A DNA stretch of 62,311 nucleotides, the filler included, from Platydemus manokwari (Eukaryota): the NCBI GenBank assembly GCA_037951405.1. It is 6 parts of 6 records of this genome, joined end to end, with 100 filler letters (N's around TTAATTAATTAA, not from the genome) between each part and the next. Parts side by side here need not be neighbours in the genome. Positions count along the whole stretch, not along the records: positions 1 to 15,270 come from JBBMOY011312538.1; 5 more parts are not named here. The stretch is one strand, 5' to 3'. Shown here one piece after another: positions 3,907-12,566 of this stretch. Each line of letters starts with the position of its first letter. Within the stretch, counting starts at the first letter, position 1. The translations under genes and the position numbers were made by a program. Below the pieces are notes generated by a model, which saw only the letters and a list, made by a program, of their open reading frames with translations, was not told the DNA's origin and did no database searches.

Positions 3907-4387
3907 GAATATTAATTTAAGACTAGTAACACCATTTTTAAAAGAGAAAGAGCGCGAATTAAGGTAATGAAACCGGCAATACAAGGCGTGACCAGAACTC
4001 TTTGACTTCAGAATTTTGGTTTACTAAAATTGCATTAAAATCTTAAATATTTCTCGAGTTATGCGTCAGGTTGCATAACAACTACCCTAAGGATGATTCC
4101 ATCAATATTCAAGCAAAATGAGTTGATGCGCATAACACTGAAATGCGACATTGAGTCATTATCATTACCAAGTTTTCAATTTCCATAAATTTCTCCAAGA
4201 ATTCGGCATATTCAAATAAATCCCAACATTACCATAATTTATTTCACCAAAATAAAAGTTATTGTCAATATCAAAATTTATACGAAATAAATTTACGCAT
4301 TAACAATTCGTCTAATAATCCAATATACGACGACAAAGAGGGAAAATCTGATTTCATTCATCACAGCTTGTTCCATGTTCATTGCGA

Positions 4388-4430
4388 CTGCTGCTGCTAC
4401 TGTTGCTGTTGCTGCTGCTGTAAATGCTGC
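4388..4430. repeat. Imperfect (CTG/GCT)n trinucleotide tract
   Basis: CTGCTGCTGCTACTGTTGCTGTTGCTGCTGCTGTAAATGCTGC; no supported coding frame. Confidence 0.7.
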
Positions 4431-5974
4431 AAAACTTTACACAAGTCTCGTCTGATAAGGCACGAATGACCAGTTATGAAATACGATGGGAAAAATTTTA
4501 GATGAATTTATTCTTCACTTATCTCTCATATTTGACACAGCAAACGGCTTCGACGTTACGCTAATTAGATTATCGAGCATTCCAATAATACAACCTTCCG
4601 ACCAACAAAGGTGAGTCCATCTTGTCGACTTATTAGGAAACGACAAATCCATCCCATTCAATGCTGCATATCAACAACGAATAGAAAAATCCCAATAATT
4701 AATTTACGACACAACTCATTGAAAATTTTCGATAATTATCCCCATGATCAGTGATTATTTTAATGAATCCCATTCAAGTGTTAAACGATTTAAGAGCATG
4801 ACAAAATCAAAGTATGTTAAGGATTTTTATTCCTCGTTTTTTGTAGACGAATTATATGTCGGGTATGAAAATTATCGATCGGGATTATGTAAGCATTGAA
4901 AATTTATTTTTCAAGTTGTCTGACATTCTAAAATAATTATCATCAAGAGGGAACTTATCGATTAATGTTGTAAAATGAGAATTTTCTGAGATTGTCTTGA
5001 CTAGGATAATTGTTTTATTATGGAATGAAAGAGAAAGATTTGGTAGAACCAATAGAAAATGACTAATTTTCTTTAATATTTATTATCTTGGTTTAATGGT
5101 TTGTTATTAATTCCCCACAATCATAAACCATACGAACAACAACTAATGTGAAATCAGTGAATTATTTGTTGAAATGAATGATTTCTGATATTTATTACCA
5201 GCATACAATCAAAGAAAATCAAATCTAGAAAGAGAGGGGTGGCGACTCCTCAATTTGTTTTAATGATAAGATCTCAATTATCGAACCATATTCTGATGGG
5301 AATTTTGAATCCCAAGTGAAAAGATTTGATTTGATTTTGTTACTTCATTATTGATAATAAAATTGGGGAGTGTCAGGAAAAATTATTGATTCAGAGACTC
5401 GATCAGTGACCATACTGGTTCACAATTTTTGTGTAGCACAGAGTGTGCACCGATTCCTTTTTTAAGAGGTTCTTCTACAAAAAATCTACCACAATTTCAA
5501 TAATCGATGAACACCAAATAGATTGAAGAAATGATTTTTTTTTATTCGCCCAGACAATCAATTTGTAGTCAACAGAAAAATTCTGTGAAATGAGACAAGG
5601 AAATTATTATTTCCTGCAAATAATTTATCTCTGTCAAACCTTGTATAAATTAATATAGCTCGAGGCATATGTGTATATTCGTTCTTTTATAGAGTTCATT
5701 GAATATGAAAGAGAATTGAGGTCACTGTCAGAATTATCTGATAAACAAATGACAAAAGTTTTTTTACAAGAGAGAAGAAAAAGAAAAAACAGAGAAAAGG
5801 TGAAAGAGGCTATTTTAAAGATAAAGTTTAAAGAAATAAATCAAAGCAACTTGTGAAGGTTTTCTTTAATGATAATAATGAATAACGCGTGAAGAAAAGA
5901 ACTAAAACAAGTATAAAGCAATTTTTAAAAAGCAAGTTAAAGTTAAGAAAAGGATTTCTAAGATAAAATTTTAA

Positions 5975-6400
5975 ATTTTTTGAATGTATTGTAAAAATCT
6001 ATATAGTTTATTTAATTAAATTCCCGAAAAATATTTATGAATTTTATATGAAGCATTTTAGAAGAGTTCGTTTTGAATCTGTTTGAAATCCAATATTGAT
6101 TTGACTAGAACGTAAAAATCTCCTACAATTTGATTATTTGAGAAATGGGTGAAAGTATATAAAATAGCGATTAATTGAAAATTAGCGAGGATTCCTTTTA
6201 AAATTAAAAGCAAATTGAGAGATCATCTCAATTTTAACAATTACTTATATACAAATAACCAATGATATTATTAAATATGTTAACTAACTCTTTAATAATT
6301 TTTAAAAAAAATCATATAGAAGTGTTGTGATTAGAATAGGAACTTGGTTTATCAATTCTATTTAGTTCCTATTCAACATCATAAAATGATAGATATCAAT
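5975..6400. repeat. Dispersed ~450-bp AT-rich repeat family A (other copies ~26240-26690 and, inverted, ~55810-56360)
   Basis: Colinear shared blocks TGTATTG(T/C)AAAAATCTATATAGTTT, GACTAGAAC, AGCAAATTG, TAACTAACTC and GGAACTTGGTTT; the third copy is more diverged. Confidence 0.65.
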
Positions 6401-6617
6401 TGAAGTATGTAAATAAATCCACTTTCACGGAATGATAAAAAGCCTCAAAGATAAATCTAAATATCTATAAAAAATATTACTACACCAATTTTAATGATTT
6501 CTTGATGCCTCCTTTCCATTTGAAAGTCGAGGTATGAAAATCCTAGAGGAAAACAATGCAAACTAAATATAAAAATTAATAATTAAAGTATTACTTTATA
6601 TTTAATTGATGACGGAT

Positions 6618-6758
6618 AAAGCAGGATCAATCACGTTGAGGTTTTTTTTGAGATCTTATAGATGCGTTTCTAACTTAGGTTATAAACATGGTACTGTGAA
6701 TCATTCTAAGTGCTTTGTGAATCCAGATAACCGAGACATTTATACTCAAAAACATTGA
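6618..6758 (+). mobile_element. Merlin / IS1016-type (ISXO2-like) DDE transposase remnant
   Basis: Translation KAGSITLRFFLRSYRCVSNLGYKHGTVNHSKCFVNPDNRDIYTQ, followed by IE after a frameshift, matches the GY.H..VNHS..FVDP.TG.HTQ.IE motif. Confidence 0.75.
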
Positions 6759-8636
6759 ATCAATATTAAATAAGGACTGTTGTTTTACTGATATAATTTC
6801 TCTATTTTTATTCTTTCTCATTTAACATGAAATTGTAAGCCAAAAATATGATTAAAACACCATTATAAATAAATTTTGAAATTAAAAAATAGTTGAAAAA
6901 TCATTACGTTAAAATCAGGTCAAAGGATTCTTTTCTTAATTTAAGCCCAATGTGGTTCTAAAATAAAATTTTTAATTTGTTGCTTGCATTGCAAAAATAC
7001 ACATAGACTTTACGAATTATATCCATTGAAATCATTTCGAATTTTTGGCTTAATTATCTTAAAAACAAATTTTTAGAAGTTTAAAATAAAAAGTTAAAAA
7101 ATAACTAAATCTTTTAAATCTTTTACAAAATGATTAAGGGAAAAGTGGGTCAATGTAGGTCAAAGTGCAAATGAATGAAAATTAGGGATGGCCCATTTAA
7201 ATATTAGAACGAAGATGTAGATATACTCTGAATTTTTAAATTTATTTTTATAAGAACACTTAATATTAGATTATCAAGACATGCCAGGCATCTATAAAAT
7301 CATTATTAGAAATCAAAATTAATAAATTTCTAATTCTCAGTTTTTCAATTTTAAAATTCCTGATTAGTAAACAAATAAAAATAAACAATCTTATTAAAAT
7401 AAATTCTATTTTGAAAGTGTAAACAAAAACTTTCGTAAATGATTTTTAAAGGAAAAACCAACACAAACAGCAACTTTTCCGATAAAGATTATGATATTTT
7501 CTCCTTTGAAACCATCATCGAAAACGGTTTCGAATTGCTGAGTCAACATATTTCGAATTCTAATTTTAAAATCAATCCGAAAATTGGAACATCTGACAGA
7601 AACAAAACGGTAAAATTAATCACTGAGAAAGATTGTTCGGGGAAAATTCATTTCCATTGGTAGAAATGAATTTGATGTAAAAAAACGTTTCACCATAATC
7701 ACGGGGTGACAAAAACAAATTGATGTTGAGTGATTGTAAACGATAGATCATCTACAATATTTACTCATTCGAAGAATTCTAAAAAACAAACAGTCGAAAA
7801 AGAAATTATTAATTTCAAACCAATTATCATTACAAAGTCGTTCGGATTTGTTTGTTGAATTATTGATGATGTCATCTCATAATAATAAATGGAATTAATG
7901 AAATATTATTTATTGAAATATTATTTATAAAAATTATCTAACGAAAATACTAGTAATATCTGACTGAATGGAATTATCAACGAGACTCTTTGTTAATCAA
8001 ATTAAATCTCAACAAATATTAAATTAATTAAAAAATATTATTTAAATAAATAATTTCAACATTTCACTTGACTTTTTACTCTCACCACAATGGAGAGACT
8101 CTCCACGGGGATTACTGTATTTTATATGGGCTATTTATGAAGTTAGCACGATAAGATATTTTTTGCAAATAATATTTATTCTTATTTTTGTTAAATATTT
8201 TTGTTTCAATACAGAGTTGTCGTTTAGTTTTGAAAAAATATTTGTTAAATTGAAGTATTTTTATTTTAGAAGAAATTTGTTTTGAAATTTATGACTTTAA
8301 TATGACTGTATTATTGTGTTTTAAAGTTAGTGTGGACGTTACTAAATTCGAAACACATAGACACATAAACACAGACACACACACACTTATATATAACGGA
8401 CAAATATGAAATACGAATATAAGTACCCAGGTGAATACATCTTCTGAATAAATTGTCCGACTAACAGAATGTAGCACTCAATACATTTATTTCCAGATAT
8501 TTCATAACTAGTATCACTGGTACATTCGCCAGTCGAATTTATTTTGTTATCGTGTTAATATCACATCAAATATTTCTAATCTAATCAAACGAATCTTATC
8601 TATTTGATAATTTTGAATCTATTTTCTCTATTTCAG

Positions 8637-8765
8637 TACGAAAATTATCCTTCAAAAAGAACTTACTACTTAACTGGTGGTCTAAGATATCGTAAAAGAT
8701 ATGGCCCATATAAATCATTGGATTATCTCACCGGTGGACTGCGATACAAGAGAAAAGAACAATGA
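8637..8765 (+). CDS. Neuropeptide prohormone, last coding exon; predicted peptides TYYLTGGLRY and YGPYKSLDYLTGGLRY (1020HH-like YLxGGxR[Y/W] type); upstream signal-peptide exon not located
   Basis: Polypyrimidine tract and TTTCAG acceptor end at 8636. Phase-0 translation is YENYPS-KR-TYYLTGGLRY-RKR-YGPYKSLDYLTGGLRY-KRK-EQ*. Two identical YLTGGLRY octapeptides are flanked by di/tribasic cleavage sites, and 7 of their 8 codons differ synonymously. AATAAA at 8795-8800. Confidence 0.85.
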   Translation, partial: YENYPSKRTYYLTGGLRYRKRYGPYKSLDYLTGGLRYKRKEQ

Positions 8766-11700
8766 AATAATTTTTAAACCCATGTATGGTGAAAAATAAA
8801 TGGTTTTACCAAAGTTATTTTTATTTTTATCCTATCCGTAATGGAACGTTATTCAAATACAGGTCTTGTAGATGAAATCTTTGTAGTGATAAATTTACCA
8901 TTGTAATTCCATCGTATGATGGTTTTCAAAATAAATAACGATAACGATAATTGATAATAAATTCATAATTTCTGACAGAGAACTATAATTATAGGTTATA
9001 ATTTAATTTTGAAAACTCAGAAATTTGGGTTCGACAATAATAATAGATCTGTCAAACTATTTGTCAGCATCTCATTCAATTTTGTCAGAAATTTTTCAAT
9101 CGATCTGGCAGTATTTGAAGCAATAGAAAAGTTAAAATATATTTAAATGATAATGATAATCATGATAATAATAATAGCAAATATAATAATTGTTAGTGAT
9201 AGCTATTTCGTTTAAAGTTGTAGATTCGTTTAGATAATTTTCGAAATTTTATTTTTCCAGTGATCTTCTCTAACTACCCGTCTTAATTAGGCATATAAAT
9301 ATTAATATATCTTTAAATAAATATATTTAAATTATTTAAAAGTCATTTCATATTATGCTTAAAATAAATTAATATTATTATTATTAAATTATTAAAATTA
9401 TTATTCAGTTCTTCTTCCATAATAATAATAGGGGATCTATAATTAATGGTGTTATTAATAATTATTTCANNNNNNNNNNNNNNNNNNNNNNNNNNNNNNN
9501 NNNNNNNNNNNNNNNNNNNNNNNNNNNNNNNNNNNNNNNNNNNNNNNNNNNNNNNNNNNNNNNNNNNNNNNNNNNNNNNNNNNNNNNNNNNNNNNNNNNN
9601 NNNNNNNNNNNNNNNNNNNNNNNNNNNNNNNNNNNNNNNNNNNNGTGTGTGTAGTAATGAACTGTGTTACTGGAGTATCCAGTTTCACTTCTTATAATCG
9701 AAAATAATTGCAAAACAAATGACTTTTTTCAAATTAATGATAAAAATCTAACGAAAGGAATAATTAAAAAGATGTTATTATTTTGATCACAATTCTTGTA
9801 ATAACGTCAAATTGTATCTCGTCAAATTATTCAACAGGAATAAATTTGAATAACACTGGAAACCGATCATTTGTGATAACACATATTTGATAATTTCGAT
9901 TATTTCATGGATTCGATATGTTGATTGATTCGAACTAAATCTATATCAAGAAATTGAACGTGACAAATAAGTATATTCATGTGAAGAAAATTTTATTCAA
10001 AATTAAATGAGAAAAAATAGCAAAAAAGTATCTCATAGCTTCAAGTAAAGACATGTCAAGATAGCAGATTATAGGCAATAAGTCGACAGAAGTTATTAAA
10101 CGTAGACAAAATTGATAGATGCTTTCATCGGAAATATAAAAATGACTCTGCTCCATTGATTAATTTCCATAATATTATGAATTACATATACATACATACA
10201 TAGATTTCACGATGAAACACCTTTGCTCTTTAAGGAAATTCATTGATATCACTCAGTTGTATTAAAATAAGCTTAAAATATTGCTTACCTCTTGTGAGCA
10301 TTTAAAAATGATGATGATTTAAACAAAATGAATTCAGAAGATTTATTGATTCAATTTTATATAAATAAATATTAATTTTTGTTTAAATGATTGTAAGTAA
10401 ATATAATTTTGTGTCTTGATTTTTCAGTTAGTTTTCATTTGAATTTTCGCCAAAATCTAATGAACAATAAATTGAATGAAAAGGTAACACGTAATAGATT
10501 AATAATTTATTAAATTTTGTTTTATGCTAAGCCATTAATTAAAACAAAAACAATGATTTCCCAAAATTTAATCTTCTCTATTTCAATCCTAATATGTTTC
10601 CAACAATCAGTCGGGAACAAGAGAAAATCAAATATTATAAAAACAGGAAAAAGAGAATCTTCTCATTAAACTTTGAAAACAATTAACATTATAAAATAAA
10701 TATTTTCCATAATTTTCTTACCTTAACAAACCTATTGATTATTTCCACAGGCGTATTGATACGATTTTTGTTGTCAAGAGGTTCGTGAAATACATTTGCC
10801 AAGATAAATGCTGTGTATCAATCTTGACATTTATGCCATTTGTTAATTCACGCGAATTAGATGACAGATTATTTTAAATATTACAAATTTCCGCATTGGT
10901 GTTAGAAAAACACAAACGAATGGATAAATCGGCAAAGTATAATCAAAATAATGTTAATAGACACGACTAAAAGTATATCTTTGCATCGAATGAAAGAAAG
11001 CTGCCTACATTGTTGTTTCTAATGTCTTTGACATGATGGAACCGCATATCTATACATACAAATAACTGAGATTCATTTTATTTAACAACATCATCCATTA
11101 GATTAATGGTGAATGCAGTAATTTATTGCAAATTAAAGTGGATAGAGACTAAACAAGTTGATCGAATAATATAAGAAGTTCGCTGAAATTCCACTCTCAA
11201 CGCCATCTAAACTTCCAGACAACTTGAACAAGATTTTCTTTAATAATATATCGAATACAACCCCACAAAATTATCTTTGCAGTTAGTTTTTCATCTTTGA
11301 AGAAATTAAAAGAGCTTAATTGAGACGAGATTGCCTAAAATACCTTTGATATGGAAACAATGATTGATTGAATATAAACATCATCGCTATGCTCGCAACC
11401 TTAGTATTATTAAGCATTTAGTTTATCTAGCTCATAGATCGGCAAACTCTGGCTTAATCGTCCTGGTTAAGGTACTTTCTCTTTCATTGCCATTGCTTAC
11501 AGCGCCACTTGTAAGCTCATCTATTAGCTCCTATTTATTTTAATACAGTGTTGAACAAAAGATGGTACGGCTTCATTTTCAAGGGATTAAACACCTGTAC
11601 TTCTTAAAAAAAAATTATTGGATAGCTCGCTTACAGATGGATTCCATAATCATTTATGTAAGTCGATACTATTTCATAATGCACGCATTGAATACGAACT

Positions 11701-12354: not shown

Positions 12355-12566
12355 CTTTTTTCTGAGAACGTAAATAATTTTTGAATTCATCCCAATAATT
12401 GTGGAAAATGGAGCTATGTAAGTGACAGCCACCGTAAACAATTGATAACTGGCTCGTAAAGCTGGAACGGGAAAGTTATCAGTGCACATGACAACTCTAT
12501 TGGAACCGTTGGTGTATATGGTTAATGTGTAATAAATCGGTATTGGTGTTGCAAATATGAATCCAC
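12355..12566 (-). CDS. Internal exon of a class A (rhodopsin-like) neuropeptide GPCR covering TM4-ECL2-TM5; other exons not found
   Basis: TTTTTCTATCCAG acceptor and AAG|GTGTGA donor. Translation GFIFATPIPIYYTLTIYTNGSNRVVMCTDNFPVPALRASYQLFTVAVTYIAPFSTIIGMNSKIIYVLRKK shows the TM4 Pro, ECL2 Cys with an NGS sequon, and a TM5 Y-x-x-P pattern followed by I...L-R-K-K, typical of peptide receptors. Confidence 0.75.

What the first reader, a model, noticed from the sequence alone, without database searches (positions are those of the whole stretch)
8637..8765. Neuropeptide precursor exon missed by the ORF track, encoding two YLTGGLRY peptides
The octapeptide is repeated exactly in protein while 7 of 8 codons differ (TAC TTA ACT GGT GGT CTA AGA TAT versus TAT CTC ACC GGT GGA CTG CGA TAC), a direct sign of purifying selection. 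KR/RKR/KRK sites flank both peptides, and the lack of a C-terminal Gly donor predicts non-amidated products. From memory, they resemble the planarian 1020HH-type YLKGG(I/V)RW peptides; whether this gene is already described cannot be determined here.
Basis: partly seen in the sequence, partly recalled or inferred. Interest (0 to 1): 0.7.

Follow-up and report, generated by a model that had tools for sequence, protein, structure and literature searches.

The report
Planarian 1020HH-type neuropeptide precursor exon
This is the last, peptide-coding exon of a flatworm neuropeptide precursor gene from the already described 1020HH family, so it is a real gene piece but an ordinary new member of a known family.

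Summary
After a clean acceptor (..ctattttctctatttcag, AG at 8635-8636), window 8637-8765 (+) encodes 42 residues and a stop. Two YLTGGLRY copies (8667-8690, 8724-8747) differ at 8 bases in 7 of 8 codons, all silent. KR, RKR and KRK flank them, and no Gly precedes the basic sites.

A paralogue in the same genome (252-base contig C384301) has its acceptor at the same codon. Across the 30 codons of peptides, cleavage sites and KRKEQ tail it shows 17 base changes, all silent. All 8 amino-acid changes lie in the spacers.

The family is known. Collins et al. 2010 (PMC2953531) sequenced unamidated YLTGGIRY and QSYLTGGIRY by mass spectrometry from the 77-aa Smed-1020HH-2 prohormone. 1020HH-1 carries YLKGGIRW and schistosome npp-27 carries YITGGIRY. 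The same genome also holds a 1020HH-1-like gene, a three-exon 1020HH-2-like gene and a decayed copy.

Not shown: splicing and expression, because the only public run is DNA. The signal-peptide exon is also not identified. The best candidate, 4375-4419, is weak.

Verdict: new member of a known kind, low to moderate interest.

The parts
8617..8636 (+). Pyrimidine-rich tract and splice acceptor (AG at 8635-8636); phase-0 intron end
   Evidence: It is the only AG between the upstream in-frame stop (8577-8579) and the first KR. The paralogue L002 has its acceptor (ttcag) at the homologous codon, and similarity drops to 54% upstream of it.
8637..8765 (+). Coding part of the terminal exon: 42 codons plus the TGA stop
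   Evidence: The paralogue comparison gives 20 silent-only codons and 8 replaced codons, all of the latter in spacers.
8655..8660 (+). KR cleavage site before peptide 1
   Evidence: invariant in the paralogue.
8661..8690 (+). Predicted peptide 1, TYYLTGGLRY (monoisotopic mass 1205.608 Da)
   Evidence: Identical in the paralogue L002. The core is 7/8 identical to the MS-confirmed YLTGGIRY.
8691..8699 (+). RKR cleavage site
   Evidence: invariant in the paralogue.
8700..8747 (+). Predicted peptide 2, YGPYKSLDYLTGGLRY (1864.936 Da). The N-terminal extension varies and the YLTGGLRY core is invariant.
8748..8762 (+). KRK cleavage site and short C-terminal tail EQ
   Evidence: KRKEQ is identical in the paralogue despite three silent codon changes.
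8795..8800 (+). AATAAA polyadenylation signal 30 bases after the stop
   Evidence: L002 also has AATAAA at or just after its stop.
4367..4419 (+). Weak candidate for the signal-peptide exon. It could be a first exon from ATG 4375 (MFIATAAATVAVAAA) or an internal exon with a phase-1 acceptor. The phase-0 donor GCT|gtaaat is compatible with 8637.
   Evidence: It has the same phase architecture as exon 2 of the 1020HH-2-like gene on L007. However, the same filter gives about 1.6 chance hits per 8.6 kb. The stretch is also a (GCT)n-like tandem repeat. Confidence is about 0.3.
4569..4610 (+). Speculative small phase-0/phase-0 spacer exon (IIEHSNNTTFRPTK) ending at the only consensus donor in the upstream region, AAG|gtgagt
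   Evidence: Inference only. The same donor also fits a phase-2 reading of an unrelated ORF that starts at 4486. Confidence is about 0.2.

Best explanation
Window 8637-8765 is the terminal, peptide-bearing exon of a prohormone gene of the flatworm 1020HH neuropeptide family, in a planarian other than Schmidtea mediterranea. It is a paralogue of the 1020HH-2 type. The steps below are inferred from what is established for this family and for prohormones generally. One or two short upstream exons supply the start codon and signal peptide. The precursor enters the secretory pathway. A prohormone convertase (PC2 in planarians) cuts at KR, RKR and KRK, and a carboxypeptidase trims the basic residues. 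Two unamidated peptides ending in YLTGGLRY are then released from neurons to act on a receptor that is still unknown. What is shown here: the exon anatomy, selection on the peptide cores and cleavage sites, and the family resemblance. What is inferred: splicing to a signal-peptide exon, processing, secretion and neural expression.
For: The exon anatomy and the silent-only intragenic repeat come. The paralogue on C384301 has its acceptor at the same codon. Over the 30 codons of peptides, cleavage sites and tail it shows 17 of 17 nucleotide differences silent (crude P about 1e-11), whereas the spacers have dN about 0.64. Collins et al. 2010 report a 77-aa Smed-1020HH-2 with a signal peptide and the layout KR-QSYLTGGIRY-KK-QVPG-KR-YLTGGIRY. 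Its peptides were sequenced by MS without amidation, and a 1020HH-2 peptide mass fell after pc2 RNAi. The same genome holds further family genes with recognisable signal-peptide exons: a 1020HH-1-like gene on C1369981, and a three-exon 1020HH-2-like gene on C1274718 plus C1889555 whose last exon also starts in phase 0 shortly before KR. A poly(A) signal follows the stop closely.
Against: There is no transcript evidence. The only public run holding the stretch behaves as DNA, with colinear contigs at about 7-10x and no joint at 8636. No convincing signal-peptide exon was found in the 8.6 kb upstream, and similarity scans with the exon 1 and exon 2 peptides of the sister genes score no better than controls. 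Protein libraries, Pfam and the ESM Atlas gave nothing. A decayed family copy exists in this genome (L031), so a dead copy is possible in principle.
Confidence: 0.8

Rival explanations
1. This is a recently silenced relic. The exon is intact and was under selection for most of its history, but it is no longer joined to a working promoter or signal-peptide exon, for example after the high-copy repeat inserted at about 5900-7100 upstream.
For: No upstream coding exon could be identified. A highly repeated element sits in the presumed intron or upstream region. The genome does carry a decayed family copy, L031, with a lost donor and an in-frame stop.
Against: The exon has no stop, frameshift or replacement in any functional position. 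The acceptor, the stop codon and AATAAA are all intact. Signal-peptide exons in this family are only 37-59 bases long and diverge fast, so failing to recognise one is expected.
Confidence: 0.13
2. This is a chance open frame in AT-rich non-coding DNA, or a local duplication that merely looks like a peptide repeat.
For: The stretch is short (42 codons) and has no hit in Pfam or in the protein libraries.
Against: A DNA duplication would not leave 8 of 8 differences silent. The paralogue keeps all 30 functional codons at the protein level while the flanks are unalignable. The peptide matches an MS-confirmed family 7 of 8.
Confidence: 0.02
3. This is an exon of a secreted, processed precursor that is not a neuropeptide, for example a gland or defensive peptide that reuses the same motif.
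For: Expression site and receptor are untested here. Some planarian prohormones are expressed outside the nervous system (Collins et al.).
Against: All described family members are neural. 1020HH-2 is expressed in the lateral cephalic ganglia. 1020HH transcripts are 81-fold enriched in brain libraries. 1020HH-1 marks peptidergic brain neurons.
Confidence: 0.05

Closest known systems
Smed-1020HH-2 prohormone of Schmidtea mediterranea (GenBank BK007025; Collins et al. 2010, PMC2953531)
   Same: A small precursor carrying two copies of an octapeptide Y-L-T-G-G-x-R-Y. Each copy follows a dibasic site, has no Gly amide donor, and has a Tyr-rich or acidic spacer ending in KR before the first copy. 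The peptides were shown by MS to be unamidated. The core mass is identical (941.50 Da).
   Different: Position 6 is Leu here and Ile in Smed. The linker is RKR plus an 8-residue extension instead of KK-QVPG-KR. The first peptide starts TY rather than QS. The second copy is followed by KRKEQ, whereas in Smed it ends the protein. In this genome another locus (L007 with L032) resembles Smed-1020HH-2 more closely in its signal and propeptide region (..TEALPRSGD against ..SEAVPRSAEN, compared by eye). The window gene therefore looks like an additional paralogue rather than the orthologue.
   Same: Same family and same YL-x-GG-x-R-aromatic core, with dibasic flanks and no amidation.
   Different: Lys instead of Thr at position 3 and Trp or Phe instead of Tyr at the end. 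Its counterpart in this genome is a separate gene on C1369981.
Schistosoma mansoni and S. japonicum npp-27 (Collins et al. 2010, Table 2 and Table S7)
   Same: The peptide ends in ..Y-[IL]-T-G-G-I-R-Y after KR and is unamidated. This shows the motif is conserved across flatworms.
   Different: A single copy at the C-terminus of a precursor of similar size, with Ile at positions 2 and 6 and a VPP N-terminal extension.
Dugesia japonica 1020HH (Dj1020HH)
   Same: The founding member of the family name. Collins et al. report that the D. japonica homologues are needed for recovery of visual-system function (the response to light) after amputation.

Membership tests
1020HH neuropeptide prohormone family (Collins et al. 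2010) | Peptide core Y-L-[T/K]-G-G-[I/L]-R-[Y/W/F] | tested here: met
   There are two exact YLTGGLRY copies. They are 7/8 identical to the MS-confirmed YLTGGIRY. Leu at position 6 already occurs in the family, as YLKGGLRF of Smed-1020HH-1.
1020HH neuropeptide prohormone family (Collins et al. 2010) | Basic cleavage sites flank each predicted peptide | tested here: met
   KR, RKR and KRK are at 8655-8660, 8691-8699 and 8748-8756. They are invariant in the paralogue.
1020HH neuropeptide prohormone family (Collins et al. 2010) | No C-terminal Gly before the basic site, giving unamidated peptides | tested here: met
   Tyr directly precedes RKR and KRK. The Smed peptides were found unamidated by MS.
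1020HH neuropeptide prohormone family (Collins et al. 2010) | N-terminal signal sequence on the full precursor | tested here: inconclusive
   The exon has no start codon, so an upstream exon is required. Candidates at 4375-4419 and elsewhere are not distinguishable from chance. Sister genes in the genome do have short hydrophobic first exons.
1020HH neuropeptide prohormone family (Collins et al. 2010) | Precursor shorter than 200 residues | not testable with these tools
   Only the 42-residue last exon is certain. The speculative models give 57-71 residues, and these joined models were not submitted to any tool.
1020HH neuropeptide prohormone family (Collins et al. 2010) | Expressed as a spliced mRNA in neurons, with peptides detectable by MS | not testable with these tools
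   No RNA run holds the stretch. The single holder is DNA-like.
1020HH neuropeptide prohormone family (Collins et al. 2010) | Purifying selection on peptide cores relative to spacers | tested here: met
   Window against L002: 0 replacements and 17 silent changes in the 30 core codons, and 8 replacements in the 12 spacer codons.

The most novel reading that the evidence does not exclude
The window gene and its paralogue on C384301 define a third, undescribed 1020HH subtype. Its features are two YLTGGLRY copies, an RKR linker with an 8-residue extension, and a conserved KRKEQ tail. On this reading the family has expanded to at least four intact loci plus a pseudogene in this planarian, against two genes described for S. 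mediterranea. A more remote possibility is that the isolated rhodopsin-type GPCR exon 3.6 kb downstream on the other strand belongs to its receptor.
Probability: 0.35. Interest if true: 0.35.

Novelty: new member of a known kind. Interest (0 to 1): 0.25.

Why it matters
The finding adds a member to a flatworm-specific neuropeptide family. Collins et al. (citing earlier D. japonica work) link that family to recovery of visual-system function, the response to light, after amputation, and the family is used as a marker of brain neuron types. It shows that such 40-codon exons, which ORF-based annotation cannot see, can be recognised from the sequence alone. The signature is repeated peptides with silent codon differences and dibasic flanks. 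The within-genome comparison also maps which residues are constrained (core, cleavage sites, KRKEQ tail) and which are free (the spacers). That is useful for designing synthetic peptides for receptor de-orphanisation. It does not change what is known about how such peptides are made or how they act.

Tried and rejected
- **Protein word searches.** Searches with the window exon and with the L007 exon found no candidate at all. L007 carries the exact YLTGGIRY words, so the library evidently lacks planarian prohormones and the blanks say nothing.
- **Pfam.** Scanning the exon and the paralogue gave nothing.
- **Full profile search.** The search of 1.84 billion representatives with the two-paralogue alignment gave one hit, a low-complexity SYLTNGI repeat protein that is unrelated.
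- **ESM Atlas.** Feature scores were all below 0.9.
- **RNA evidence.** One run was found and it behaves as DNA. It shows no joint at 8636.
- **ATG plus hydrophobic scans.** Several stringencies were tried over the upstream region.
- **Donor-anchored listing.** All phase-0 donors in the upstream region were listed with their open frames.
- **Architecture-based scan.** This scan looked for a phase-1-in, phase-0-out exon. Controls give 1.6 chance hits per 8.6 kb.
- **Sister-gene similarity scans.** The exon 1 and exon 2 peptides of the sister genes scored no better than controls.
- **Paralogous upstream copies.** Own-genome DNA searches for paralogous copies of the upstream candidates found only (GCT)n repeats or the locus itself.
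- **The high-copy repeat at 5900-7290.** I considered it as an exon carrier and rejected that.
- **The isolated GPCR exon.** No DRY, CWxP or NPxxY motif occurs elsewhere on that strand, so no receptor gene model could be built.
- I did not run a computed alignment to Smed-1020HH-2 or -1, because those sequences exist here only as text in a paper and have no reference. The comparison is by eye. Joined multi-exon protein models were not sent to any tool.
- **Earlier findings and species.** The species could not be named.

Full report
**Observation.** The piece is AT-rich, about 26% G+C. At 8617-8636 a pyrimidine tract ends in cag. From 8637 the + strand reads YENYPS, KR, TYYLTGGLRY, RKR, YGPYKSLDYLTGGLRY, KRK, EQ and a stop.

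The two YLTGGLRY stretches (8667-8690 and 8724-8747) differ at 8 bases in 7 of 8 codons without changing a residue. No other 8-residue repeat occurs in any frame of the piece. The frame is closed by TAA at 8577-8579 and holds no ATG. The only AG before the KR site is the one at 8635-8636, so the stretch can be coding only as a spliced, phase-0 exon. AATAAA follows 30 bases after the stop. The bacterial-style ORF list shows it only as a 53-codon TTG frame, which explains why an ORF track missed it.

**Is it more than chance?** A six-frame search of the window's own 911-Mb, 1.99-million-contig assembly found a second copy on the 252-base contig C384301. Its acceptor (ttcag) sits at the homologous codon. 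The exon is 72% identical in DNA but 81% in protein. Similarity falls to 54% upstream and 40% downstream.

Twenty codons differ only silently. The eight replaced codons all lie in the two spacers. In the 30 codons covering peptides, cleavage sites and the KRKEQ tail, 17 of 17 base differences are silent (crude P about 1e-11), silent sites are saturated, and spacer dN is about 0.64. This is strong purifying selection on exactly the parts a prohormone needs.

**What it is.** The exact octapeptide is not in the paper library, but the family is. Collins et al. 2010 (PMC2953531) describe Smed-1020HH-2, a 77-residue prohormone with a signal peptide and the layout KR-QSYLTGGIRY-KK-QVPG-KR-YLTGGIRY. 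The peptides were sequenced by MS in sexual and asexual animals and carry no amide. Smed-1020HH-1 carries YLKGGIRW and YLKGGLRF, and schistosome npp-27 carries VPPYITGGIRY.

The window's peptide therefore differs from a confirmed neuropeptide by one isobaric I/L change (941.50 Da). Several papers address function and expression:
- D. japonica homologues are reported to be needed for recovery of visual-system function (the response to light) after amputation.
- 1020HH-2 is expressed in the lateral cephalic ganglia.
- 1020HH is strongly brain-enriched.
- 1020HH-1 marks peptidergic brain neurons.

**Family in the same genome.** A degenerate DNA pattern for the core found 11 sites against 16 for the reversed control, so single sites are mostly chance. 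Sites with cleavage-site context are real.
- C1369981 carries a complete 1020HH-1-like gene. It has a 13-codon first exon, a 54-base in-frame phase-1 intron, an acidic spacer, then YLKGGLRW and YLKGGLRF.
- C1274718 (L007) carries a last exon with an acidic spacer, KR, QGHYLTGGIRY and a basic tail. It also carries a 59-base exon 2 whose end (..TEALPRSGD) resembles the Smed-1020HH-2 signal-peptide junction.
- The first exon of that gene (12 codons plus one base, donor gtaagt) lies on the overlapping contig C1889555. It is conserved in a second copy.
- That second copy, C1300574, is decayed. The exon-2 donor is lost, exon 3 has a stop, and the cores are mutated.

Two points follow. Family genes here have one or two tiny signal-peptide exons. 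And the L007 locus, not the window gene, looks like the 1020HH-2 orthologue. The window gene and C384301 then form an extra subtype.

**What could not be shown.** The one public run holding the exon gives contigs colinear with the genome at 7-10x. It shows no joint at 8636, so it is DNA, probably the source of the assembly. No transcript evidence exists here.

The signal-peptide exon was sought in several ways. The only stretch with the same architecture as L007 exon 2 is 4367-4419. It contains ATG 4375 followed by MFIATAAATVAVAAA and a phase-0 gtaaat donor. However, the filter yields 1.6 chance hits per 8.6 kb, and the stretch is a (GCT)n-like repeat common in the genome. A consensus donor AAG|gtgagt at 4611 could close a small phase-0 spacer exon (4569-4610), or it could belong to something else. 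I rate these upstream exons at 0.2-0.3.

Protein libraries, Pfam and the Atlas were blank or spurious. An exact-word query with the L007 exon was also blank, so the libraries simply lack these precursors.

**Mechanism.** The exon layout and the selection on it are shown. The following steps are inferred from the family. They are co-translational entry by a signal peptide, cleavage at KR, RKR and KRK by PC2 (a 1020HH-2 peptide mass fell after pc2 RNAi, ratio 0.64, P 0.055), carboxypeptidase trimming, and release of two unamidated peptides. The single Lys inside peptide 2 could give a shorter SLDYLTGGLRY form.

Joined spliced models were not submitted to any tool.

**Verdict.** The nearest relative is corrected to 1020HH-2. 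This is a new member, possibly a new subtype, of a known flatworm neuropeptide family. Interest is 0.25.

Noticed in passing
L010 (G000:C1369981), locus 1264-1563, + strand: A complete 1020HH-1-like prohormone gene. The first exon reads MNLKFLLTFFIGI plus one base. It is followed by a 54-base in-frame intron (gtaag..ttttag), an acidic spacer, then YLKGGLRW, KRRS, YLKGGLRF and a stop. The position of the first Smed peptide copy (YSYLKGGIRW) is degenerate here (YSYSKRGSKE).
   Followed up: partly
L007 (C1274718, minus strand) with L032 (C1889555) 449-485: A three-exon 1020HH-2-like gene. Exon 1 is MYINMNIVITCF plus C, with donor gtaagt. Exon 2 is 59 bases and ends ..TEALPRSGD. An 86-base intron follows. 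Exon 3 carries a single QGHYLTGGIRY, and a frame-shifted relic of a second copy lies after a poly-A run.
   Followed up: partly
L031 (C1300574), minus strand, about 285-663 on the locus: A decayed copy of the L007 gene. The exon-2 donor has changed from gt to at. Exon 3 has an in-frame stop. The relic cores are FLTGELRY and KYLTGAIRY, still in the Smed-like KK..KR arrangement.
   Followed up: partly
window 12355-12566, minus strand: An isolated exon bounded by ccag| and |gtgtga that matches positions 110-183 of Pfam 7tm_1 (rhodopsin-type GPCR, TM4 to TM5; E 6e-5, below the gathering score). The best solved relative is the cholecystokinin A receptor, at a non-significant E of 0.43. No other GPCR motifs were found on that strand of the piece.
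   Followed up: partly
window about 5900-7290: A very high-copy repeat. Summed contig depth reaches about 63,000 in the DNA run, against 7-15 elsewhere. Its end at 7100-7290 matches more than 40 other contigs at 71-77% identity. It lies between the candidate upstream exons and the peptide exon.
   Followed up: no
window 4387-4430: An imperfect (GCT)n-type tandem repeat (period 12) in otherwise AT-rich DNA. Similar repeats occur on many small contigs. In one frame it encodes an Ala/Thr/Val-rich stretch resembling a signal peptide.
   Followed up: partly
G000 contigs C1274718, C1889555, C1643058, C1861578, C1710066: Neighbouring contigs overlap by exactly 77 bases and fork. The assembly therefore consists of de Bruijn-graph contigs (k = 77) from low coverage, which explains the 1.99 million contigs and why paralogue contigs are only 250-400 bases long.
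   Followed up: no
window 9470-9644: An assembly gap of 175 N lies 0.7 kb downstream of the exon. It was left untouched.
   Followed up: no
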